From Haliotis rubra (taxonomy: Eukaryota): 64,000 nt of DNA. Below, in pieces: positions 14,919 through 42,200 of this stretch. Position numbers and translations under genes: made by a program. The notes beneath the pieces are model-generated. The model searched no databases. It saw only the letters and a program-made list of their open reading frames with translations, and was not told the origin of the DNA. The stretch lies in NCBI RefSeq assembly GCF_003918875.1, contig NW_025766956.1, forward strand, positions 434,001 through 498,000, given 5' to 3'. The stretch's first letter is position 1. Every line of letters starts with the position of its first letter.

Positions 14919-15082
14919 TGAGTGAGTGAGTTTAGTTTTACGCCGCTTTTAACAATATACCAGCAATATCACGGCGGGGACACCAGAAATGGGCTTCAAG
15001 CATTGTACCCATGTGGGGAATCGAACCCGGTTCTTCGGCGTGACGAGCGAACGCTTTAACCACTAGGCTGCCCCACCGCCCC
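14919..15082 (-). mobile_element. SINE family 1 with TSD tgttggttaatg
   Basis: Reverse-complement copy with flanking direct repeats. Confidence 0.9.
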
Positions 15083-16544
15083 TGTTGGTTAATGCAGCTT
15101 AAATTATTGTTGGTGGCTGAAACATATTTGGTCTTACAATGAAACTCGCATTTAAAACAGTAGTTCGCTTGTTTGCAAATTTCAAACTGAAGAACAAGCG
15201 GTCATTGTCTGATTTGGAGTCGCTATTCGCTATTCGATAGCATTAGTGTTTGTAGTCTTATCGCGTCGTCTGGTTTCTTTCAGTGACACAGAGTAGAGTT
15301 TTGATCTTGCTCTGTGCAGTCCCAACGGTCCCAATTGCTGCTTCAACGTCTTGGGGATGCTGGAAACAAATTCAATACATTGGCGTTGGGAGTTCGTTGG
15401 TTAGCGCAGGGAGACTATATAAGGTTGTAGAGTATCCCTGGTTAGCGCGACTTTCATTTTAACACGAGTGGAATCCAATGATCTTCTCTGGACATTCAGT
15501 AAGATTGCATTTAAGGCTGTTCGATAGATTGTATATTTGCTCTAATATCCTAACTTCCGGTCCTTGAAACATTAAAGCGGATGCCGGATCTATACTGGAT
15601 CACTCGTGTCGATAATTCCCATGTGTCTCTCCAACATAAATCAATTGGCAAAGGCCTCAGATGGGGCTTATAGTCGGACACGGACAGGTCTTCAGTATGT
15701 TTTGTGCCGTATGTTTTAGCTTTAAAGTAGGGTGTGATTTTAAGATAACTATCGTAATAGGCACTTTCTTTATAACACATGATGAATATGGGTCGAGTTC
15801 ATGATATCCAGAATGATAACAATCTAAACCATGTTGCAGCAAGTTATATAATCATTAAGTTATATAATGAATAATTGACGGTTAGTTATATGTAATCAAA
15901 TGATACATTGCTTTAAATAAGCATCTCAGTTCATATGACCCAGTGTCCACGAGGCAGATGCACTATAGCATGATGTCATCATATTATCAGCGCTACTTCC
16001 GTTTGAGGAATTATATCATTGGCAGACCAATTTATAAAGTTCCTCATTCTAACACTTAATGAATGACCTACTTATACATAGTCATTGTTGTAGTTTCAAT
16101 CAAAGCACTTCTCATGTCCTGACCTACACTGAAAATGAGCACAAGACCACCTTCAACTTTTAAACAAAGCTGTAATCAATATACTGAACCGCTGAACCGG
16201 GCATATTACTGGTGTATAGTTCAGAATAAGGCATAATGATGACCCTTCCCTCATGAGATGGAGCGTTCATCTACAAACATGACACTGTGCTTGACTCTTA
16301 CATCAATCGGCACAACATGACGACCGTCTCTTTTACTGTAACAGGAAGAACAGATAACAATAAACGTGCTTGGCTCGTGTATTAATCAGTACAAGAAGAG
16401 CAATGGCTGGAATGTGGTGTTTCATTCAGTACAACACACATGATGACTCTGTTCCATTGACAGGAAGAGTATCCATCTCTAAAAATACTCGTAGAATAAT
16501 AGTAAGCACACACATACACAAGAAGAAGATTGACTTGTATATCA

Positions 16545-18849: not shown

Positions 18850-19700
18850 ATATACAACATCCATCAACACTCGTCGATATACAAATCCATCAATACGTTG
18901 TTATACACAATCCATGTACACATCCATGTTGGTATACACAACATCCATTGACCCATATGTTGGTATACACATCTGTCTATCCATAGGTTGTCATATATAC
19001 AACATCCATCTATCCATATTTTGGTATACACAACATCCATTGCTCCATAGTTTGTTATAACAACATCCATCTATCCATAGGTTCGTATACACAACATCCT
19101 TCCATCTATATGTTGGTATACACAACATACACACATATGTATGTAGATATACTCAACATACACATACTCAACATACACATGCATTTGTGCACAACATACA
19201 CACATATGTATGTAGATATACTCAACATACACACATATACATGCATTTATACACAACATACACACATTTGTATGTTGATATACTCAACATACACACATAC
19301 ACATGCATTTATACACAACATACACACATTTGTATGTAGATATACTCAACATACACACATACACATGCATTTATACACAACATACACACATTTGTATGTA
19401 GATATACTCAACATACACACATCCACATACTCAACATACACATGCATTTATACACAACATACACACATATGTATGTTGATATACTCAACATACACATGCA
19501 TTTATACACAACATACACACATTTGTATGTAGATATACATAACATACACACATACATTTATACACAACATACACACATATGTATGTTGATATACTCAACA
19601 TACACACATACACATGCATTTATACACAACATACACACATTTGTATGTAGATATACATAACATACAGACACATGCACGTATACATAACATACACATATAG
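18850..19700. repeat. AC-rich compound minisatellite (about 30- and 60-bp units)
   Basis: Repeated atacacaacatacacacat...gatatactcaacatacac...catgcattt. Confidence 0.9.
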
Positions 19701-22283
19701 GCATACAGGTATACTCAAGGTTAACCCATTCATCGTCTGGATAGATCAAAAGTCTACAATTTAGTGAAACTGGACAAAATGACACTAACATCTTTTCAGT
19801 TTCTGGTGCTGTGAGGCAAAGCAATGATACAATAATTAACCTTCAATGGGCCACACAGAAAAATATTTAACACAAAGTTGGTAAACGTTTGGTAGAAAAC
19901 ACTCAACAAGAATATATGAGGTCAAGATAAGCATTATGTTTCTGGTCCTTGCATGGATCATTTTCACACTCACATCCACACATGTGAATTTTCAACCAAG
20001 GGCAGGTAACTCTAACCTGCTTTGCCACCCCATGATGCCTCTTATGGCTGAGTGTAGACATTATAAGGCCTTTTGGGATACTGAGTGCTGTTTTGACATT
20101 GACATTGAACCTTTATGAATTGCAAGAAAAGGCATTTTGCAAACATTGACATCAACATTCTGTTGTCAGATTATGAAGTGCCATTCAATTAAGCTTGATA
20201 AAATAATGCTCCATCATAATGTCATTATAGACTAAACCAAAAGACCAGAAACAGAATACCTTTTCTTGAGGTTTAGGCTCAAATTTGAGTCCACCTGTGA
20301 TTGAAGCTACATTGGCAATGGGCAATGAAAGACTACAAGAATCAACAACTCAGACTGAAGAAACAGTCACTTTGGACATATAAAATAACATATTGCAAAT
20401 ATTCTCAGCTCAGTGTAAACTGGTTCAAAAGTCTTTTTGCCAAAAGCTTAAAACTTAGATATACTCTATGAGAGTTAAATTTCACAGCTTGTTTTGTAGG
20501 AAACACACAAAAACCAACAATGTTCATGTCAGCATTGACTGATTTCCTGCAATGAATAAGAAAATGTTAGAGAAGTATCATCAAATATACCTGTTTATTT
20601 GTTTATAACTTCATAACTTTAGTATTTTGCTTTGGCTAAAAAATACAAGAACCTTGGATCCTGGCATGGTTGAAGGTGAATTGCGATGCCACAGAAAAAT
20701 GGACCACCTTTAACCTCAGTTATAAATTACATCACATTTAAAAAAAGAAAATCATGGTTGACTGTCCTAGCTCTGATGTGGTTTAAAACCAAGTGAATTC
20801 AGGGGCAGGACAAAAACTACATTTATACAACTTCCCATTAAAGTTTTGACAAAAAGCATTGACAATAGGAATAATTAATATGAACTTGACAATTAAACAG
20901 TGGAGATGATCATCAGGTAACAAGATATTGGTGACAATGATGTTGATGATGATGACAATGAGAACAGAAAAATGATTTTGATTGCATTCATAGGCCAATA
21001 AAATAACATAACAGAGTGCACATAGAAATTCACTTTCTGAGATTATAACTGTAATTATCCAAATTTAGGATCAGAAAATATAAATAGGACAAACACACTG
21101 ATAGGAATAACATAAGTAGAATGTAGGAAGGTTTGTGCTACAGAAATGATGTCGGCACAATCAGAAATGCGCTACCTGTCCCCAATGCCCTTTTACATGA
21201 TCATAGCCAAGATGATCGTACTGATAACAGAGACTTATGACTGTTTGTAGTGTTAAGATTGTTTGTAGTGTTAAGATTGTTTGGTGAAACCCACTAGTAC
21301 AAGTATAGGGCTGACTAACCTAGAAACAGAACCATGGAACATCTGGACTTGAACCTGTGATGCTAGGTTTCTAGCATGTCTGAGGGAGGCAACTCTGCAC
21401 AGTGAATTGTGGTCCAGCAAATAGGCTTTCCGTCCTTACATGATAGCAATGAATGAGGATGATAACTTGAATATATATATATATGACTAGGAAAACTATT
21501 TGACACATTTAATGAACAATGAAACTTACAATTTTGAATATTGTCAAAACAGAAATGTGCTGAAGAACACTTTCGACCACAATGACACATCAAGTACAAT
21601 TCCAGCAAATTATGTTTTCCCACCAAACTAACTTTTCACAAATCACATTTTGCTGTTTTTCTACCGGTTAACTTGAAACAGAATATTAAATGTTTACATT
21701 GGTCTGTATAAAGAGCACCTGTTTTGTTTGACAAAGAGTATACATAGAGATCTACTGCAACTATTTGTCACTATTACTGTATATTGCAGTATTTTACAGT
21801 CAGGCCTTTTTGAGATGTGTATCCTCTAGGATCAGTACTCTGCAACTAATTGTAAGTTGTCCTAATACTACCTGGTACCCACCACACAACTGAAACTGTA
21901 GCCATGCCTACTGTTGAGTTAATCCACTAATCGTCTCAGTGAGGTATTGACATAACAGTTTCCAGATTAATTTGATCCTGTTTATGATGTCCAACCCAAA
22001 AAAAAATTTGCATATATATACATGTAACTGCCACAAAAAAAAATGTACCACCAAAGGACCACCTTTATTTGTGTCTCAGTAAATATACCATCTGCTACTT
22101 GCAGCAAATATTTTGTATTTCAAACCTAGTATTCATGCATGTGTTGGGTAGGGACACTTAGACCTGTGAGACAAACAGGGAAGGGTAGTAACTCTGTAGC
22201 GTGAGGCCCTGCTGATGTTTAGTCCAGCAGTACTGTAGCCAAAGACAGGATGCAGCGGTGACATGTACAGGTAATGTGGTTTC

Positions 22284-22480: not shown

Positions 22481-22882
22481 CTAAAGGGGTTACTATCATC
22501 ATATTGATAACAACAATCAAATAAAATAAAAACTGATGTCCTTGAGTTTGCAGCACAGAAAGTGAGCAAAGAAGCTGTTCTGTCCAACTGATGGTAAGAT
22601 TGATCGCACAGGTGCTCACTGCACCGATGATAAACAGGATCCAACAAAACTTCTTAATCTTGTGAAGAAGAAGATTAAAATAACCTGGGGAAACGCTCTT
22701 GGTATTATTTCATTCTCCCATGGCACACCAGACCCTTGACGCTACAGGTTTGTCGATGTGATCTACTGGTAGGCTACCTGACAGGTCTACTTTCTAGGTT
22801 AGACCCTCTCTGTTCTCCGGGGGTCTGATATACTGTATAAAATTCTGTATCACTAAAACACTGTTGTGTCCACCAGGGACTT

Positions 22883-23031
22883 TCAGCTATTGTACAGCTG
22901 GAGATCTAGCTTCACTATTACCTCCCCTGAATTAACTTCATACAGAGGGAGCTTCTTTGTGATCGGCCCTTTCCGACTCATACTGCTATAGTACACCTCT
23001 TTCACCTGTATCTCTGTCCGTCCTAGGAAGT
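22883..23031 (-). CDS. ITSN1: Intersectin last coding exon (DFLGRTEIQV...KGPITKKLPLYEVNSGEVIVKLDLQLYNS*)
   Basis: ccttcag| acceptor; TGA at 22885-22883; C-terminus resembles ITSN1-L. Confidence 0.95.
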
Positions 23032-23729
23032 CTGAAGGGAAAGCAAAAACATAATCAGATGTACGAAAATAGTTTCATCAACATGTATACAAGGGGATAT
23101 CAAACTGATGTTTCACCATTACTTCATGCAGAGTAAGACCTTGGATGACTTTGAAGCATAGAAGTTCATACTGTATCCCCAGGGTTTGTCAGTAATTTGC
23201 AAATATATGGCATATAGTACACTGTCACATTTATTACCAGTAACAGGCACAGATTTACCTCATATCATTTATATGGCCAAAATGTGTTGAAAGATAATTA
23301 TTTTTCAGGTTTCAAATATGAGCTCTCAAAATGCTGGCCCATTCTCCTCCATGGAGTGCAGGCATTTATGAACATTCAGTCATAATTATAGAACAATAAC
23401 TTTAAAAGTTAGACATGTTAATAAGAAAGAATTACGTTCATAGACCAGGGAGAGCCACAGCTTGTGTTTTGTATGTTGGTCGGAACACATGAAGCGAGAT
23501 GATCATACTGGCATGATAGGTAAATCATTAGGAAAAGTGAGATAAACATAGTGAAAATCAATGGCTTTCAATCCCAGAGTGTATGCTCTCTGAAAAACAC
23601 ACACACAAAATCATTCACGAATTCATAAATCCAATTTTCATTAATTTAAATCCAACCTGGTGGTCATCTCAAAAAGACAAGTTGGCAATAGTGAGCATTT
23701 GGCCACGGTAACATGTCTGGATGTCCTAC

Positions 23730-23903
23730 CATTTGGGGAGAAGATGTCCCGGTCGTACACAGTGAGGCAGAGGACATCCTCCTCCAGATCCTTGATGATG
23801 AATTGCATTGAGTGGTTCCACTTTGGGTTGAGCGTGCCCTGGATGACCTTGGTTCGGTGCTCCTGGCTCCCCATGCTCACCTCGCAGTACGGGTCACTCT
23901 TAC
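23730..23903 (-). CDS. ITSN1: Intersectin exon: C2 core ([30 protein letters not shown]...[12 protein letters not shown])
   Basis: 174 nt, phase 1 to 1; C2 consensus SDPY, TLNP.WN, VYDRD. Confidence 0.96.
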
Positions 23904-25232
23904 CTGCACGGAAGGTGGTCACATGGTCATACAAGGTTACATGTGGCACCAGCTGGGTGTGGAGGATATTACTGAATGGGATTGTACACCATAAGACAGA
24001 CGGTCAAGGGGTATAGGAGATGAGTTGTAAATGCTGTCCATTTAGCTAGTGACAAAAGTAACATATTTATCTTGAGGTTCACAAGTTACAAGGACAAGCC
24101 ATGATAAGCGTCTTCTGAGTTGTATATTTATCTGTGATACTGAAAATATGACCTCAAAAGTGAGTGAAATAAATGCTTGAAACTTTTTGTTCCACAAACC
24201 TTATCTCTCATGGTTCACAGAATATATGGTGAATTTACCAAGAACAATGACATTTTAATGTTACTACATATTTCTGTCTACAACTAAAGAATGGTGCATA
24301 GATGTACATGAGAAAATGGAATGCAAGGCCTGGCACCAACAGGGTATCAGGTGTGCTATATAGAAACACTCTACACATCAGGTCACGTGTAGTACGTAGG
24401 TGAAGGTCACACAGCACTGCAAGGCCTGCTATTAACAGTGTATCAGGTATACCACCTGGAAACACACTACACACCAGGTCACACTCAGTACTAAGGTGAA
24501 GGTCACCAGCCACTGCAAGGCAGGCAGCCTACAGTGTGTCAGGTAGAACTCCCTCACTTTCAGTACAACACACAGCAGGCCACAGCAAGGTCATGCATTT
24601 TGTGTTCCTAAACTTTGAAGTCAGAAAGAATAACTATCTATCTCTGTTATTAAACTGTAAGATCATAATTCCATAGTTTATTTTGGTGGGTTTTGTTTAG
24701 TTCCATGCTTGAAATCAGACCCAAAAAATCCTAAAATATGTCATAATCCCACATCGGACACAAAGGAAACAACATTCCACAAAAATATCTACCTCCAAAA
24801 TGAATCCAATGCAATGCGTAAGCTACAAGCATGTAAGTCAGTGGTTTAATGTATCTCTAAACAGTATTTAGTTACATCACAGAAAGTCAGCTTGATGTGG
24901 GAGGAAAGCCTGGGCTGATGTTTTCACTTTGATTTTGGTAAGATCTGTAAACATGGGAATGGTTGCGGCATAGCCAAAAAAAATATTCTAAATGAACCTG
25001 AAATTGAAAGGATAACATATTCCTTCCATGTAACATATGTTATATTTGGGATTACACTTTCTTAGTAAAGCACAAAATCTAGTTCCTTCCATGTTCCCTA
25101 AGAATGGTTGCTGTGACAAAACAAATGTGTCTAATCTGGCATTAGGGTGCCATATTTGTTAAGGACATATCAACCTGTGACCCGGCTATAGTGGAGCTTG
25201 GATGTAATCAGTCTTTGCTGAAATGGTCCTAC

Positions 25233-25310
25233 CATTATTGTCGCTGGCTCGGAGGTTAACAGCTTCCTGTATGACGACGAGCAGCCTGCCAACCCCAGGG
25301 GACTTGCGCA
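25233..25310 (-). CDS. ITSN1: C2 strand-1 exon, variant B (MRKSPGVGRLLVVIQEAVNLRASDNN)
   Basis: catcag| acceptor, ATG|gtagg donor; 78 nt, phase 1 to 1. Confidence 0.88.
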
Positions 25311-25609
25311 CTGATGTACAGATGACAGACAGGTCATGCAATGTTATACAAGGGAGGAGGAGGCAGGCAGACACACCTGGCAGGGAGGGGTCGTCACATC
25401 ACCTGGCACTACACATCAGTAACCACTGTCAGGTCTGACCTCAGACATGGGGTATAGATTATGACAATGATGTGGGAATAATTTGTTCTGTGGCAAAATG
25501 TCTTAGAGTCCATTAGAGACTTTATTGTGATTTAACAATCCCCCAAACTTAAATCTTAAAGTCTCTGTAAAATGCATATTAATGATCTCAACCAGGAACT
25601 TTGAAAGAA

Positions 25610-26062
25610 CATGAGCCAGGAGCTGAAAATTGACATATTGGTACCACTCAGAGGGACCAAAAGTTTTAGTGTTTTTTATATTCCTTTATGTCTCTATATA
25701 ACAATTTTGACTCTTACAAAATCAGGAAAAGCAATGATTTAAAGGTACCAAATATCACAACTTGATATTAATGAAATCTTTTTAATCATGTCACCACTAT
25801 TTTTAAACCACCCCCACCCCTTTCATTTCCAACTGATTTGCTGAACTTTACTCACGATTAAAGCTTGGAATTGACCTTTTTTTTAAAAATTTGGGTTTAT
25901 TGGCGGCCTTTTTGGATTTAGCCTCGTCCTGAGTCTGAGCTACCAAACCGACATGGCCATCATACATTTTTATGTCTAGAGACCATACCAAGTTCAAAAT
26001 ATAAAACATAAAAGTGTTTGGTCCCTCTGATTGGTACCGAAAAATTGTCTGGCTCATGGCCT
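25610..26062. mobile_element. Degenerate inverted-repeat DNA element (possibly Kolobok-like)
   Basis: catgagccag...ttggtacca.tcagagggaccaaa pairs with tttggtccctctgattggtaccga...ctggctcatg(gcct). Confidence 0.55.
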
Positions 26063-27118
26063 AAATTTGAATTGTGTCAAATAACCTTAGATAAAGAATA
26101 TAATATTTTTCATATAATATTTGCCACTGATGTATAGGTAAAGGTGATGTGACAACACCATATATGGCTGCTGGGTGGTAGTGCCCTCTGGAGGTGTGAT
26201 GTGAACCAAGAAGAGACCTGTAACCTAGCTACCATGCTGATATTCCTCTATTTGTCATGGTTTCATGCCTTGAGTTGCCTGAGACTAACAGGGAGGACTA
26301 TACACAGGTTGTATCACAGCTTAAGTGTGGAATTTTTGGTACCAGGAAATTGAAACACATACACCTCACCCCACCCCCAGGATACATTCAGCAACTGAAT
26401 TTAGCTATTAGTTACAACAGAGCAGCCGATCAGATAGCCATTTTTCAGCCCAAGCAATCACAAACTACCAAATTTAATTGTGTAATTATTTAACAATAAT
26501 GATTTTCATTCTGGGGCAATAACCTGTTGTTTCAGTTGAACAGTATTGTTCTCTCCTGAGTCATTGGCTGTGTCTTTGAAATGAATGGTGCCAGTGGGGC
26601 TGACTCTATAAATTGGTCTAAGGCTGGGGTACAAGACATCAAATTCTTCATATGAATGCCTCATGGGCAAGTGACGTTAAAGTTGGAAATGCTACGGCAT
26701 TGAAGTGATGACAGAGAGAGGAGCATCATCGTGAAAAATACATCATACAAAAAAAAAAATATGGTATTAGTACAACCCAATGAACAAACTGTTCCTTAAG
26801 CTTGTATGTACATGTAAGCATGTAGTAGCCAGATTTCATGCAATCCTCATACCAGGTCGCAGCAAGAACATTTCAAGTGAAACACAGACCAGCCTAACTC
26901 ATAAGAACATGCTATCTATATAATAATGACTGAGTCCAAAACTTTCATTCACAGCTTCATCAGAAGGTTATTTGTCCATTGGGGTTGGAACTAAATCTGA
27001 TGTGCTTCTGCTAAAACTGAAACTGAAAGGAACTGCTAGCCATGCAACAGCTGTCGGATACGAAGACGAGGATGCCATGCCATCACTGAAATGAAACACA
27101 TCCATGCTGCAGCCTTAC

Positions 27119-27202
27119 CACCGTCGCTCGTGGACTTGAGGCCAACGCCCTCCAGGATGATGACAAGCAGCCGTCCAACCGGGCGGGAGCGAAGTTGAGC
27201 TA
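27119..27202 (-). CDS. ITSN1: C2 strand-1 exon, variant A ((IA/T)QLRSRPVGRLLVIILEGVGLKSTSDG); probably mutually exclusive with variant B
   Basis: aatag|tag| tandem acceptor (84 or 81 nt), GTG|gtaagg donor; phase 1 to 1; paralogous to exon B; absent from the ORF track. Confidence 0.8.
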
Positions 27203-28081
27203 CTATTGTCATAGAGAGTGTTCAGATTGGCAGACAAAGAATCAAGCCATATGATGAAGTTATTGGAGCCTCTTAAAAGTCATTGTTTGTATCACAAACA
27301 TGCTTCATAGCAGTATTAGAGAATATAATGATGAACAGTGTTACCATAGTTACACAATATTTGTTAAGATATTAAACTGCATATATATGTATATGTATAA
27401 TTCAATACTCAGTGAGACCAATCATTTCACATGAAACACATAAAGAAAATATATGCCAAAATATGGTTGAGAGAAAGGCCATATTGAGTGGGTGTTAGTA
27501 TCATACTGAATAAGTACAAAAAGTTTGAACTAAACTTTGAAATATGACATGGGAGTTTATTAACAATATCAACATTCACTTATTTCCCCATCTAAACTTG
27601 TCACACAAAATTCTCAACCTCTGGCTGATTCTCAATCGGTAATATGAACTACTGATGCTAATGGGATGAGGTGAAATGTGAATAAATGTCACTTTCAAGA
27701 TTATTGCACATTTTCGTGGCTGCTTGGACTAGTTGGACAGTTTTATATTGCGAGCCCACTGAGATACCATGGTACAGTTTAAACATGGATACCTCACTCA
27801 GACACAGTATACCGATTCCCCTTATTGTCTTGTGTCAGCGAGGGTAACAAAAGCACCATTTAATCTTTTCATGTGTGACACAGATGGGCATTTAACCATC
27901 CACCTTCCCCCCTCGAACAGGTGCTCTATCCACAAGACCATGGAGGCAGTTAATGCTAATGGCTCATGGTCATTGGCAATTACCCGCAAGACAGTGACAG
28001 TCTGTGCATACTTAAAACATAACTGATGTATCCCTACACTGACTTCTCCATGTACACTGAGTGGACAAGGTGTCGACTTAC

Positions 28082-28164
28082 TTGAGTGCTGACGCTCCTT
28101 CTTCTTTTTTTCTGTATCTAGATACTGTCTTGATGCTCCTTCAATCTCACGGATCCATAGATCC
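28082..28164 (-). CDS. ITSN1: Intersectin exon: PH C-terminal helix (DLWIREIEGASRQYLDTEKKKKERQHS)
   Basis: 83 nt, phase 2 to 1. Confidence 0.93.
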
Positions 28165-28368
28165 CTGAAAGATTCACACATAATCATCAATAAGAGAAAA
28201 GTATTTAATGGGATCAGGCATCAACAGTGTGTAGTCATTACACACATTCATCTGTGTAGGATTTACAGTTGAGAGTTATCTCCCTTAGCTGAACACAAAT
28301 GGATTAGTCATGTACAGAGGTGAGAGGGGCCTCAAGCATGACATAAAAAAACATAGAGAACATCTTAC

Positions 28369-30281: not shown

Positions 30282-30452
30282 GTGAGTGAGTGAGTGAGTA
30301 TGGTTTTACGCCGCTTTTTAGCAATATTCCAGCAATATCACGGCGGGGGACACCAGAAATGGGCTTCACACATTGTACCCATGTGGGGAATCGAACCCGG
30401 GTCTTCGGCGTGACGAGCTAACGCTTTAACCACTAGGCCACCCCACCGCCCC
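30282..30452 (-). mobile_element. SINE family 1, near consensus, TSD acaagtataaaaga
   Basis: Reverse-complement copy with a perfect 14-bp TSD; intronic. Confidence 0.92.
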
Positions 30453-30643
30453 ACAAGTATAAAAGATCCACTGGGGACTTGTTTTAGGCATGCCATCATA
30501 TCCAACAGGGAGGATCCATGCTCATGATGTTTATCACTGAAGTGTCTAGTCCAGGAGTGATATTTGACAAAATACTATCATATAGTTTGAATATTGCTAA
30601 GTGCAGTGTTAAACAACAAACAAACAAAAATGTCCCCACTCAC

Positions 30644-37879: not shown

Positions 37880-38829
37880 GGTGTAAGTAATCATAGGTGA
37901 TGGAGGAACACGATGTCTATCTATAAAACTGTCATGTACTGATGATGTGTCTAACCAGAATCGCAGTGTTTCTTGTTTTGCAAGATATTTCTGTGCCGTT
38001 GTATTTCCATCTTATTGTACATGGTCCACAGATGCCCTTGTCACCCTGGTTTTTTTTTTTTCAAAAGCATACATTTAGATGCATATGTATGTTGTCAAAT
38101 TAATGTGATTATCATGCATATCATGCACCATAATATATTCACACCCTTGGCATCCATGTCCACGGGGTTACAGTAATAACACAGACACTCCAGCTTTGCA
38201 TAATGATTGTTTATTCTGATAATCCCTATGAACATGTCATCATCTGTCAGCGGTACTGAGTATTATCATGCAGTATGTGGGGCAGGCTGGCTACAGTGTG
38301 GTACACACATCCACATACACATATGATGGGAAGAGGATGGGAGCAGAGGACAGAGGGCATGGAAGGAGGGACATAGGAGAAGGAAAACATCTCGCAACAG
38401 AGGATATGGGCCAAAACGTAGGAAATGGGACATATTGTGATATAGAGAGAGCCTGGGACATATGGCAGAGGACATGGGAGACAAAATTTCAAAGTCAAAG
38501 GATGATTGAATAGATGACATGGGACAAAAGATGAGGGATAACAAAAAAAAGGGCATGGGACAGTAGACGTAAGATAAGTGACACAGGGATAACACATAGG
38601 ACGGGACAAAAATCATTGGATGTAGGACATGTCCCACAGCATGGGACAGAGAACAGGGACACTAGACACTAGACATAGACAAGGACACTAGATATTAACA
38701 TGGGACAAGGCGGGACATACAGGTACATTAAACATGGGACACGGTCACTACAAACAGGACATGTGACAGTGGGTTTCTACACACGATATGTGGACATTAG
38801 AGCTCTTCATAGACTGGATTATTGAGACT

Positions 38830-39298
38830 GGATATTGTAGACAGAAAACAGGTGAGGCTGGACACTGTAGACAGAGGACAGGTGAAACAGGACATTGTAG
38901 ATAGAGGACAGGTGAGGCTGGACACTAGACAGAGGACAGGTGAAACTGGACATTGTAGATAGAGGACAGGTGAGACTGGACACTGTAGACAGAGGACAGG
39001 TGAAACAGGACATTGTAGATAGAGGACAGGTGAGGCTGGAGATTGCAAACAGAGGACAGGTGAGGCTGGACACTGTAGACAGAGGACAGGTGAGGCTGGA
39101 GATTGCAAACAGAGGACAGGTGAGGCTGGACACTATATATAGAGGACATGTGAAACAGGACATTGTAGATAGAGGACAGGTGAGGCTGGACACTGTATAC
39201 AGAGGACAGGTGAGACAGGACATTGTAGATAGAGGACAGGTGAGACAGGACACTATAGACAGAGGACAGGTGAAACAGGACACTGTAGACAGAGGACT
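38830..39298. repeat. 30-bp minisatellite (gacagaggacaggtgaggctggacactgta)
   Basis: Read directly. Confidence 0.93.
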
Positions 39299-42200
39299 AG
39301 GGAGGAAGGACATGTACCCCAGTAACTGCAAGGGAACATCAAGACAATGCCATAACTGATGAAAGCCATGCTTGACAGTTCGCGCTGATAACAACATGGA
39401 TGCTACAGCAGCTGTTGGCTAAACACATGTGGACTAACAGTGATAAAACTGACACTATCAGTATGGTAGGAAGGCAGGGATCACTGGGTCTAACAGGACA
39501 CACACAGTCAATCAGTTAAAATATCCCTATTCTGTCATACAATAGACAAGAGGATAAAATCAAACTCAATACTATTGTCCAAACATTCGGAACTTAACAG
39601 GTTCATCAATATGACTTTCATTCAATCAATGATGAAGAAACAAAATGTAAGCTATAGAATACAAAAAAGTTTGCTATCAAATATTTTATTTCTTATTGTG
39701 ATACGTGAACTTTGAATAAACAATAACCCTATCAAGACACCTTGGTTTGGTAGTACAATAAGTTCATGTAACATAACAACTACACAGAGAATATATTTCA
39801 GATGCGGCTCAACTTGATCACTTGAACAATGAATAACTTAGGACATCAACTATATAATTTGACTTTTGTAAAGTCTGAATTCCATATCTAAAATGGTAGT
39901 GTAAGGACATATACACAGGATTTGATATTTGACTTTTGAACTGTTTTCATAAAAGCAGCATGTGAAGTCGCTTACATTCAGAGTTTAAATAGGTTGTGTA
40001 TTTCCGCCAGGTCCTTCCTGGTCACTAAACTTAGCATTTGATTGATGGCTGACAGTTTCAGCGACAGAACCTCAGTGGTATGACTTTAATAAATCAAATG
40101 ATTAATTACCAGCCTGATTACAGTATATTCTGATATATATTCTGATGTATAAGAGTAAAAGGCAGAAGTTTTGTGTTTCTACCATAAGCATACTTACATC
40201 ACAAAATCAGGTGCTATAGATGCATCCTTGCTAATTATCTTACAAACATGCACTTGCATCATATTCTTCTCATACCATGGAATAATCAGGTCAATATGCA
40301 CACAGTTATTCACATTTTTTAAGTAACTATTTGTTCTCAACATCAAATATTATTAAAACATAATCAATGGAAACTGAGAGGATCCAGGCATAGCATGACT
40401 ATTTTAACCCTACAATAAGGCCTATAAGGTGTGGAAAGGTGGCACAAATTCTTATTCATCTCCTCTCAATTGTAACTCCATGTAAATCATTGCAGGATGT
40501 TATACTTATAATAAGGGGTATTATACACATAGTAAGGGTTATGATTATAAGCACCGACAGTTTGTATTTCAGAGAACGTGGAATGGAAAAAGAAAAGAAA
40601 TGTGTATGATAAGTAGAATAGAATGGCCATGGTATAACATGCCGAGTTCCTGCCTATAGTTGATCAGGAGGAAGCAGTGGGCCCAAGGAGGAAATAGACA
40701 CTACAGCAGCAGGCGGAATGTCAAGAATGGAGTGGCGTTCCAGCAGCTGAGATTAAACATTGTAATGTTGGTTTGGCTCAATTCAACTACTAAATATATG
40801 TTTGGGAGGAGACACAATACCAGTGTTTAATCTTAGGGATGAAAATCAAGGGGCCCTATTCATAACCTTTATGTTAAAATTATAGGGTTTAGGATTGCTT
40901 GGAATCAGTTACTAAACAAATGTCAAGTACCCTAGGACACGATAGCTGTAACTTTGAACATTGAATACACTTAATAATGATTCATGTCTGAATTAATAAT
41001 TGTCATATTCATCCTGTTCATAAATTAAAGATAATATTAGCAGTGATTTGGCCATTCAACATACATCCTGTCCATTGTAAATACATCTTGGTCAGCATAA
41101 TTCCTATCAAAATTGGCAAAAGAGATTGCATCAGTAGAGCTGGTGAGTGTGACCCAAGTGTGCCTGATGATGGAGAGAAAATGAAAACTGTTGCATAGAG
41201 GGACCTACCCATGTTGGTTGCGAGAGCAGCCTGGTCCTACACACACTAGTGGCTGACTGACAGTCTCTGTGAAGGCTGCTACTGCTGTACTTTGGAAGTA
41301 ACTACTTGAGCTCCCGCTATAATCTGACCCATATCAGTGTCATAAGGACATTGTAAATAGTCATAAATACAGCTCCTTTCACACAGCCTGTATGCCTCCC
41401 AATAAACCGTTCAATATCTTACACAATTGTTGGTAACAGATAACCTTTTATACTTCAATTATAAAGAGGAAAATCTGAAATAGTTATTCAAGAGGAAATA
41501 AACTTTTTATTCAATATGTTATCTGGATTTACTTCCAGACGTCCTTTGAAACAAGCAATGTTAGCTTGTTAACGATTAATGAACTTTATTTGTGAAATAG
41601 AAGTAACATATCTGGATATATGACAACAGAGGTGACTGATTAAGAAGAAGGGAATCACAACACTGTTATTGAATGTGTTTTATACCACAATAATTTAACT
41701 TGCTGTAAAATGTCTGAAACACATTTCAAAATGCCCAGCAGAAACTATTAAATTTAAACATACAACTCTAGAACCATTAAATAACACAAATATGACATAT
41801 AGAATCTCAAATGGTGTCCTTTAAGATGAAAAAACTTGATTCACTCCATGGTTTCATATAGTATTGCAGACATCTGAGCCGGAGCTGTAGACGGCAAAGG
41901 TTCAATAATTGCTCCATAATTGCCTCATTATACTAACAGCCTAATCATCACAGAATGTGGACTGAAAATATGTTGGAAACTGCAAGGCTTACAACATTGT
42001 GTATACTCATGTGTGCTGCATCTGTATATCCTCTGTCGTAAAGAACACATTTTATACCCACTGTTCACTATAGATTTGTCTGCTTCAGGAGAAAAATTGC
42101 TAATTGTTAGTTGTCTATTTTTCTTGGACTGGTGGTAGCATACTGCCTACAGCATGCCTTCAGTCTTTCATATACTAGAGTGTAGGGTAAAGAAACCTGT

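What the first reader, a model, noticed from the sequence alone, without database searches (positions are those of the whole stretch)
25233..27202. Duplicated, probably mutually exclusive exons that may toggle the Ca2+-binding loop of the intersectin C2 domain
Seen: two paralogous phase-1/phase-1 exons 1.8 kb apart, both intact with GT-AG sites, encode the same C2 segment. A is RPVGRLLVIILEGVGLKSTSDG and B is PGVGRLLVVIQEAVNLRASDNN. With the shared downstream exons, B gives D-NNGKS-D in loop 1 plus D-R-D-IFSPN-D in loop 3. Established: that is the five-aspartate spacing of Ca2+-binding C2 domains such as synaptotagmin-1 C2A. Exon A gives S-DGGKS-D, so the first ligand position becomes Ser and the Asp shifts by one. 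The nucleotide sequences are well diverged while the VGRLLV core is kept, implying both copies are under selection. Inference: including both would duplicate a beta strand, so they are probably mutually exclusive and switch the Cdc42-GEF isoform between Ca2+-sensitive and weakly sensitive forms. I know of no such exon pair in vertebrate ITSN1/2.
Basis: partly seen in the sequence, partly recalled or inferred. Interest (0 to 1): 0.88.

Follow-up and report, generated by a model that had tools for sequence, protein, structure and literature searches.

The report
Alternative C2-loop exon pair in abalone intersectin
The abalone intersectin gene carries two old, duplicated exons, used one at a time in the RNA data available, that give its C-terminal C2 domain either a complete or an incomplete set of calcium-binding aspartates; the same pair occurs in many invertebrates and I found no paper describing it.

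Summary
On the minus strand of an abalone (Haliotis) intersectin long-form gene, exon A (27202-27119, 84 nt) and exon B (25310-25233, 78 nt) are paralogous phase-1/phase-1 GT-AG exons. Each encodes strand beta1 and most of Ca2+-binding loop 1 of the C2 domain.

RNA contigs show both spliced exactly as predicted. Two samples have upstream>B>downstream. A third has upstream>A and A>downstream. No A>B joint was seen, but that third sample also has a joint that skips both exons.

The pair is old. It occurs in three abalone lineages, all mollusc classes sampled, a brachiopod, nemerteans, an annelid, chelicerates and amphioxus. Vertebrate ITSN1 shows one non-Asp version.

In 20 downstream-type (B-like) sequences all five canonical Asp are invariant. 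Mollusc A-type exons lack the first one. Both forms fold as C2 in AlphaFold2.

Conserved GCAUG elements (three after A, one just before B) suggest Rbfox-type control.

Strict mutual exclusivity is not shown. Both exons are multiples of three, and RefSeq models in oysters, octopus, a nemertean and a horseshoe crab include both. The Ca2+ toggle remains an inference.

Automatic annotation already carries the isoforms, but I found no paper on them. This is a new member of a known kind; interest is moderate.

The parts
28082..28164 (-). Constitutive exon before the pair (end of the PH-C2 linker, ...DTEKKKKERQHS, ends in phase 1)
   Evidence: Sequence. RNA contig of run X2 covers 28164-28082 and joins to 25310. 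Matches Haliotis intersectin-1-like proteins.
27119..27202 (-). Exon A: upstream paralogue encoding beta1 and loop 1 with Ser at the first Asp-ligand position (STSDG); NAGNAG alternative acceptor at 27199
   Evidence: Spliced joints 28082>27202 and 27119>23903 in run X1. Present in H. rufescens, H. cracherodii and H. asinina proteins. 3-7 synonymous against 0-2 non-synonymous differences among three abalones.
26946..27118 (-). Conserved intronic block downstream of exon A with three GCAUG (27107-27103, 27080-27076, 27045-27041)
   Evidence: 76-96% three-way identity, as high as the exon, against about 55-70% further out. GCATG positions.
25311..25365 (-). Conserved 3' end of the A-B intron: pyrimidine tract, UAUAAC branch-like motif and UGCAUG (25340-25335) 24 nt before the exon B acceptor
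   Evidence: 92-100% three-way identity. A GCAUG sits at the equivalent place in Pecten and Lingula.
25233..25310 (-). Exon B: downstream paralogue encoding beta1 and loop 1 with the canonical Asp (ASDNN)
   Evidence: Joints 28082>25310 and 25233>23903 in X2, and 25233>23903 in X4. H. asinina isoform X4 uses it. No synonymous change in three abalones.
23730..23903 (-). Shared C2 exon (GKSDPYCEV...DRDIFSPN): second loop-1 Asp and the first two loop-3 Asp
   Evidence: Best solved relative is human intersectin 2, 3jzy, E 1.8e-22. Covered in all RNA runs.
22883..23031 (-). Last coding exon (D FLGRTEIQV...LQLYNS, stop at 22885-22883): third loop-3 Asp and the rest of C2
   Evidence: Joint 23730>23031 in X1, X2 and X4.

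Best explanation
This is a tandem pair of homologous alternative exons in the long (DH-PH-C2, Cdc42-GEF type) isoform of abalone intersectin. Each exon supplies the first beta strand and most of Ca2+-binding loop 1 of the C-terminal C2 domain. In the RNA data available, a transcript carries A or B, sometimes neither, and never both. With exon B the domain has all five canonical aspartates (D-x-N-G-K-S-D in loop 1, D-x-D-x5-D in loop 3). With exon A the first ligand position is Ser and the acidic residue is displaced by one. The two isoforms therefore most likely differ in Ca2+-dependent membrane binding of the GEF (inferred). Exon choice is most likely set by an Rbfox-type factor: three conserved GCAUG just downstream of A would promote A, and a conserved UGCAUG between the branch region and the acceptor of B would repress B (inferred from the known position rule). 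The upstream-type exon predates the split of molluscs, brachiopods, nemerteans and chelicerates. Amphioxus has a similar pair, possibly from an independent duplication. Vertebrate ITSN1 shows a single non-Asp version.
For: Anatomy and phases. Transcription: a 1027-nt contig in X2 joins 28164-28082 | 25310-25233 | 23903-23730 | 23031-; X4 joins B to 23903; X1 has 28082>27202 and 27119>23903. None of these joints is in the DNA-like run X5. Fold: AF2 gives a C2 sandwich for both forms (pLDDT 82 for B and 87 for A; beta1 = residues 15-25, which lie in the alternative exon). Foldseek's best match is the human ITSN2 C2 domain 3jzy, TM 0.84/0.94. Asp pattern: D31, D37, D84, D86 and D92 are invariant in 20 B-type sequences; position 31 is not conserved in the mixed A-type/non-Asp set. 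Age: two or three copies in the genomes of three Haliotis, Pecten, Lingula, Paralvinella and Branchiostoma. Upstream exons of molluscs, brachiopod, nemertean and chelicerates group together with support 97/90. Selection and regulation: the flanking intron blocks are as conserved as the exons, all four GCAUG are invariant in three abalones, and exon B has no synonymous change. Position rule for (U)GCAUG: PMC2777236.
Against: A skip-both joint (28082>23903) has about the same depth as the A joints in X1. Both exons are 3n, so the reading frame does not enforce exclusivity. RefSeq models with A followed by B are common in oysters, octopus, Tubulanus and Tachypleus. The RNA evidence is three small runs kept as contigs, which show presence but not absence or proportions. 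No Ca2+ or lipid binding was measured. A-type exons often keep an acidic residue at -5 or -4, which might partly substitute. The Asp/non-Asp assignment is not universal: in Lingula the upstream exon has the Asp, both Tubulanus exons have it, and neither Tachypleus exon has it. No Rbfox dependence was tested, and the triple GCAUG after A is seen only in Haliotis.
Confidence: 0.7

Rival explanations
1. Exon A is really an optional cassette placed in front of a default exon B. A+B transcripts exist, and A then only lengthens the PH-C2 linker, with B providing the working beta1 and loop 1. On this view the pair is two independently regulated exons, not a one-or-the-other switch.
For: Both exons are multiples of three, and A|B joins in frame as G|TG = Val. 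A+B isoforms dominate the RefSeq sets of C. gigas, C. virginica, Octopus sinensis, Tubulanus and Tachypleus. A skip-both joint in X1 shows the two exons can be decided independently.
Against: No A>B joint in any of the three abalone RNA runs, while A>downstream and upstream>B joints are present. The listed isoform models of H. asinina, Gigantopelta, Babylonia, Argopecten and Branchiostoma contain only A-only or B-only forms. The A+B models come from automatic annotation and could not be checked against reads here.
Confidence: 0.2
2. The two exons are truly alternative, but the difference is not about Ca2+. The variants change lipid or protein-partner preference of the C2 top loops, or the PH-C2 linker, and both bind Ca2+ similarly or not at all.
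For: A-type exons usually keep an acidic residue one or two positions away (SDG, SDM, SES, TAD). The Asp assignment differs among phyla. The vertebrate ITSN1-L C2 domain is reported to act through protein partners such as tubulin and annexin A2 (PMC6547669).
Against: In B-type exons the first Asp is invariant over 20 sequences from several phyla, and no mollusc A-type exon has it. By established knowledge of synaptotagmin-1 and PKC-alpha C2 domains (recalled, not tested here), that Asp is a bidentate Ca2+ ligand.
Confidence: 0.3
3. One of the two copies is a decaying duplicate whose inclusion is splicing noise.
For: Depths of the A joints are low (4-6) and come from one sample.
Against: Both copies are intact in three abalone lineages that differ by about 20% in introns. 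Exon A changes are mostly synonymous. The flanking intron blocks are conserved. Both types persist across mollusc classes and beyond.
Confidence: 0.03

Closest known systems
Dysferlin C2A versus C2A variant 1 (alternative exon 1 / 1a; Fuson et al. 2014, Structure 22:104, as cited in bioRxiv 10.1101/2022.01.18.476802)
   Same: Alternative exons replace the N-terminal part of a C2 domain and give a Ca2+-dependent and a Ca2+-independent membrane binder. Both dysferlin forms (4ihb/7jof and 4iqh) are among the structural neighbours of the B-form model.
   Different: In dysferlin the exons are alternative first exons with separate promoters, not internal tandem duplicates. The Ca2+ difference there was measured, whereas here it is inferred.
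Fox-1/Rbfox-controlled mutually exclusive exons (C. elegans egl-15 5A/5B, FGFR2 IIIb/IIIc, alpha-actinin NM/SM; PMC2777236)
   Same: A pair of alternative exons with a (U)GCAUG in the upstream intron flank of the repressed exon, close to the branch region, or in the downstream flank of the enhanced exon. The elements are conserved across species.
   Different: No genetic or biochemical link to an Rbfox protein is shown here. A skip-both product exists.
Vertebrate intersectin-1L / intersectin-2L C2 domain (human ITSN2, PDB 3jzy)
   Same: Orthologous DH-PH-C2 architecture. The shared C2 exon is 70-77% identical, and the model's TM-score to 3jzy is 0.84/0.94.
   Different: Vertebrate ITSN1 sequences show one version of this exon (EGIELKPCRSH). 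They also have SNPY instead of SDPY, so two loop-1 ligand positions are not Asp. No alternative partner exon was seen in about 60 vertebrate isoform clusters.
Other splice-tuned C2 domains (Piccolo C2A insert; Aplysia synaptotagmin-1 C2B variant), recalled from memory and not checked here
   Same: Alternative splicing inside a C2 domain changes its Ca2+ or effector properties. One of these cases is in a mollusc.
   Different: Different genes and different parts of the domain.

Membership tests
Intersectin long isoform (DH-PH-C2) | DH, PH and C-terminal C2 domains following SH3 domains; orthology to ITSN | tested here: met
   DH, PH and C2 exons are readable on the minus strand from 33.8 to 22.9 kb. 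The C2 exon is 96% identical to H. rufescens intersectin-1-like, which carries Pfam EH, SH3, RhoGEF, PH and C2 domains.
Tandem-duplicated alternative exon cluster | Adjacent exons homologous to each other, of the same phase and similar length | tested here: met
   84 versus 78 nt, both phase 1/1, 44/78 nt and 11/25 aa identical, with shared core VGRLLV. Only two copies lie in the interval.
Mutually exclusive exons (strict sense) | Exactly one exon of the cluster in every mature transcript | tested here: inconclusive
   A-only and B-only joints are present and no A>B joint was found, but a skip-both joint 28082>23903 exists. A+B models exist in other phyla. The data are contigs from three small runs.
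Mutually exclusive exons (strict sense) | A mechanism that enforces exclusivity (frame shift with NMD, steric block by a short intron, or competing RNA pairing) | tested here: not met
   Both exons are 3n. The A-B intron is 1808 nt. RNAduplex between the conserved flanks is no better than shuffles, z from -1.4 to +1.1. Regulation by a trans-acting factor remains possible.
Canonical Ca2+-binding C2 domain | C2 beta-sandwich fold | tested here: met
   AF2 pLDDT 82 (B form) and 87 (A form), eight strands. Foldseek matches include ITSN2 C2 and Ca2+-bound CAR4, E-Syt, Munc13 and dysferlin C2 domains (B form only).
Canonical Ca2+-binding C2 domain | Five acidic ligands: D-x5-D in loop 1 and D-x-D-x5-D in loop 3 (synaptotagmin-1 C2A D172/178/230/232/238; established knowledge, recalled) | tested here: met
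   Met for the exon B form: D-NNGKS-D and D-R-D-IFSPN-D, with all five invariant in 20 B-type sequences. Not met for the exon A form, where the first position is Ser in abalone and the column is not conserved in the A-type/non-Asp set A2.
Canonical Ca2+-binding C2 domain | Measured Ca2+ binding or Ca2+-dependent lipid binding | not testable with these tools
   Needs recombinant protein.
Rbfox-regulated exon | Conserved (U)GCAUG in the proximal intron flanks | tested here: met
   Three GCAUG within 78 nt after A (about 0.08 expected from the window's density of 1.03 per kb) and a UGCAUG 24 nt before B. All are invariant in three abalones amid substitutions. A GCAUG 17-26 nt before the acceptor also occurs in Pecten and Lingula.
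Rbfox-regulated exon | Exon choice depends on an Rbfox protein | not testable with these tools
   Needs a knock-down or minigene assay.

The most novel reading that the evidence does not exclude
A splice switch more than 500 million years old, probably Rbfox-driven, lets one intersectin gene produce a Cdc42 GEF whose C2 domain either has or lacks a full Ca2+ site. That would couple or uncouple actin remodelling at exo- and endocytic sites from Ca2+ entry in a tissue-specific way. Vertebrates would have kept only the Ca2+-insensitive version, which would explain why no Ca2+ role has been pinned on the ITSN-L C2 domain.
Probability: 0.3. Interest if true: 0.75.

Novelty: new member of a known kind. 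Interest (0 to 1): 0.55.

Why it matters
What the C2 domain of long intersectin does, and whether Ca2+ acts on it, is still unclear. Reviews simply call it a Ca2+-binding domain (PMC3753573), yet vertebrate ITSN1 sequences, and the one ITSN2 structure matched, lack the second loop-1 Asp, and ITSN1 also lacks the first. Many invertebrates keep a natural pair of isoforms that differ almost only in loop 1, one with the complete Asp set. That offers a ready-made comparison for testing Ca2+ control of a Cdc42 GEF at synapses. It is also a clean example of very long-term retention of duplicated alternative exons together with their intronic control elements. In addition, reviews state that invertebrate intersectins have only the short architecture, which does not hold for molluscs, brachiopods, chelicerates or amphioxus.

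Tried and rejected
- **Competing RNA pairing.** I tested docking/selector-type pairing between the conserved flanks of A and B with RNAduplex against shuffles. No signal.
- **Frame or steric enforcement of exclusivity.** Rejected from exon lengths and the 1808-nt intron.
- **Window-wide GCATG enrichment.** None (119 found, 141 expected). Only the local, conserved cluster counts.
- **Literature.** Searches on intersectin with C2 and mutually exclusive, exon duplication, or Ca2+-binding and alternative splicing found nothing on this exon pair. One apparent hit was the word 'intersecting'.
- **Abalone transcript fragments.** A search for short fragments carrying A+B or neither exon among 77-245-aa proteins returned no Haliotis entries, only other taxa including a tick with A-only and A+B models.
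- **Genomic look-ups that failed.** H. asinina X4, Patella and two amphioxus isoforms were not on record. The Gigantopelta gene was too long to fetch.
- **Asterias.** Only one copy found, so the pair is not universal in deuterostomes.
- **Vertebrate genomic DNA.** I did not search it for a relic of the Asp-type exon.

Full report
**What is in the sequence.**
The gene runs on the minus strand. Open frames from about 33.8 kb down to 22.9 kb spell a DH domain, a PH domain and a C2 domain. The nearest proteins are 'intersectin-1-like' of Haliotis rufescens, H. cracherodii and H. asinina. The window is therefore an abalone intersectin long-form gene. Its introns are only about 77-83% identical to H. 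cracherodii and H. asinina, so it comes from a third lineage.

The exon before the pair is 28164-28082 and ends in phase 1. Exon A is 27202-27119 (84 nt; a second AG allows a start at 27199). Exon B is 25310-25233 (78 nt). Both have AG/GT borders and phase 1 at both ends. The next exon, 23903-23730, begins GKSDPYCEV and ends DRDIFSPN. The last exon, from 23031, adds the Asp that completes D-R-D-IFSPN-D. A and B share 44 of 78 nt and 11 of 25 residues, around the core VGRLLV. A low-stringency tblastn finds only these two copies in the interval. Every coordinate and peptide in the finding is correct.

**Are both exons used?**
I laid the contigs of three small RNA runs and one DNA-like run of the same organism on 22800-28300.
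- Run X2 has a 1027-nt contig joining 28164-28082 to 25310-25233, then 23903-23730, then 23031 onward. This is the B form.
- Run X4 joins B to 23903.
- Run X1 has no coverage of B. It has the joints 28082>27202 and 27119>23903 (the A form), and also a joint 28082>23903 that skips both exons, at about the same depth.
- No run shows an A>B joint.
- None of these joints occurs in the evenly covered run X5, so they are splicing products and not a processed copy in the genome.

Contigs show presence, not absence or proportions, and the samples' tissues are coded. The result is 'one at a time, in different samples, sometimes neither'. It is not proof of strict exclusivity.

**How old and how widespread is the pair?**
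Protein searches returned isoform models with the A-type or the B-type exon in H. asinina, Gigantopelta, Babylonia, Physella, Argopecten and Branchiostoma. They returned models with A only, B only and A followed by B in Crassostrea gigas, C. virginica, Octopus sinensis and Tubulanus. Tachypleus has A+B and B-only models. A tick has A-only and A+B models.

In fetched genomic loci I found:
- two copies in H. cracherodii, Pecten maximus and Branchiostoma floridae (in amphioxus 378 nt from start to start, about 290 nt of intron between them);
- three copies in Lingula and in Paralvinella;
- one copy in Asterias.

A tree of the 26-residue segments places the upstream exons of gastropods, bivalves, a cephalopod, a chiton, Lingula, Tubulanus, Tachypleus and Nymphon in one group. 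Its support is 97/90. With so few columns this is only indicative, but it fits the shared signatures: GRLLVI in upstream exons, and (V/M)R+xPxVGRLLVV in downstream exons. The upstream exon type therefore predates the split of these protostome phyla. The two amphioxus exons resemble each other most, which suggests a separate duplication or gene conversion. All of about 60 vertebrate ITSN1 clusters show a single version, EGIELKPCRSH followed by GKSNPY.

**The calcium-site reading.**
AlphaFold2 models were built from H. asinina isoforms, whose exon A is identical to the window's and whose exon B differs at two residues. Both give a confident C2 sandwich (pLDDT 82 for B, 87 for A). Strand beta1 is at residues 15-25 and loop 1 at about 26-36, so the alternative exon supplies beta1 and most of loop 1. 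The best structural match for the B form is the human ITSN2 C2 domain (3jzy, TM 0.84/0.94). It is followed by Ca2+-bound C2 domains of CAR4, E-Syt, Munc13 and dysferlin.

In an alignment of 20 B-type domains from molluscs, a nemertean, amphioxus and one unnamed sequence, all five canonical Asp positions are invariant (D31, D37, D84, D86, D92). In the 18-sequence set that combines mollusc A-type domains with other non-Asp versions, position 31 is not conserved. In mollusc A-type exons an acidic residue often sits one or two places later.

That the five-Asp spacing is the Ca2+ site of synaptotagmin-1 C2A and PKC-alpha C2 is established knowledge that I recalled rather than tested.

The contrast is not universal:
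- in Lingula the upstream exon carries the Asp;
- in Tubulanus both exons do;
- in Tachypleus neither does.

Whether Ca2+ affinity really differs was not, and could not be, measured here.

**Signs of regulated splicing.**
I aligned the window with H. cracherodii and H. asinina.
- The 170 nt of intron after exon A are 76-96% identical in all three, as conserved as the exon. The sequence further out is about 55-70% identical.
- The 50 nt before exon B are 92-100% identical.
- By contrast, the flanks of the constitutive exon 23903-23730 are poorly conserved between the window and H. cracherodii.
- Exon A shows 3-7 synonymous against 0-2 non-synonymous differences.
- Exon B shows no synonymous change at all, although the constitutive exon's rate predicts about 4-5 for its length. 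This points to constraint on the RNA itself.

Three GCAUG lie within 78 nt after exon A. About 0.08 are expected from the window's density of 1.03 per kb, and the motif is not enriched across the window as a whole. A UGCAUG lies 24 nt before the exon B acceptor, between a UAUAAC branch-like motif and the splice site. All four are invariant in the three abalones. A GCAUG sits 17-26 nt before the acceptor of the corresponding exons in Pecten and Lingula.

The published position rule for Fox-1/Rbfox proteins is that sites in the downstream flank enhance an exon and sites in the upstream flank repress it. C. elegans egl-15 exon 5B is the example for a mutually exclusive pair (PMC2777236). Dependence on Rbfox itself is untested.

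I found no competing RNA pairing between the flanks. The reading frame and the intron length cannot enforce exclusivity.

**Comparison with what is known.**
The closest functional precedent is dysferlin. Its alternative first exons give a Ca2+-dependent C2A and a Ca2+-independent C2Av1. Both structures are among the neighbours of my model, and the primary paper is cited. The closest regulatory precedents are the Fox-1-controlled exon pairs of egl-15, FGFR2 and alpha-actinin.

The intersectin exon pair is present in automatic RefSeq isoform sets of many species. My searches of the open literature found no description of it. A review states that invertebrate intersectins have only the short architecture (PMC3753573).

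**Verdict.**
- The exons are real, expressed, selected and ancient.
- 'Mutually exclusive' holds for the abalone data available, but nothing structural enforces it and a skip-both product exists.
- The Ca2+ toggle is a well-founded but untested inference.
- This is a new member of a known kind, of moderate interest.

Noticed in passing
window 28082 > 23903 (minus strand): A spliced joint in run X1 skips both A and B. It stays in frame (A|GT = Ser) and would give a C2 domain without beta1 and most of loop 1. Its depth is about equal to the A joints.
   Followed up: partly
window 27199-27204: NAGNAG acceptor at exon A (aatAGtAG). Abalone models and the X1 joint use 27202 (HS-IAQL). The Gigantopelta A isoform reads HS-TQL, as expected from the second AG.
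   Followed up: partly
window 25028-25070: A roughly 43-nt stretch in the B-to-downstream intron has enormous contig depth (about 250,000 in the DNA-like run, 950-2600 in the RNA runs), with many different flanks. It looks like the core of a very high-copy interspersed repeat.
   Followed up: no
window 25560-26111 and 27584-27951: Intron stretches with 10- to 40-fold raised depth in the DNA-like run: interspersed repeats inside the A-B intron and upstream of A.
   Followed up: no
window 30341-30574 and 14941-15201 (minus frames): Two copies of a repeat whose translation reads ...GGLVVKALARHAEDPGSIPHMGT.../...GSLVVKAFARHAEEPGSIPHMGT... One copy lies in a DH-domain intron and one lies beyond the gene's 3' end. 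Probably a mobile element.
   Followed up: no
window 38800-39420 and 18900-19750: Long tandem repeats. The first is a minisatellite giving CPLSTVSSLT-like open frames. The second is a repeat of about 62 nt that contributes a regular series of GCATG matches.
   Followed up: no
L002 33696-33770; L005 47503-47574 and 49556-49630: Lingula and Paralvinella each have a third paralogous copy of this exon. In each species one copy is not used in the gene model I retrieved (the first in Lingula, the third in Paralvinella).
   Followed up: partly
L006 37384-37845: Amphioxus has the same arrangement, a non-Asp exon (QPCNSN) followed by an Asp exon (QPSDIN), about 290 nt of intron apart. The two are 20/27 identical, which suggests an independent duplication or gene conversion.
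   Followed up: partly
window 23030, 22997, 23798, 28131 and others: All RNA and DNA runs differ from the window at the same sites, for example a synonymous GAC/GAT at the first codon of the last exon. These are strain or individual differences, not editing.
   Followed up: no
   Followed up: no
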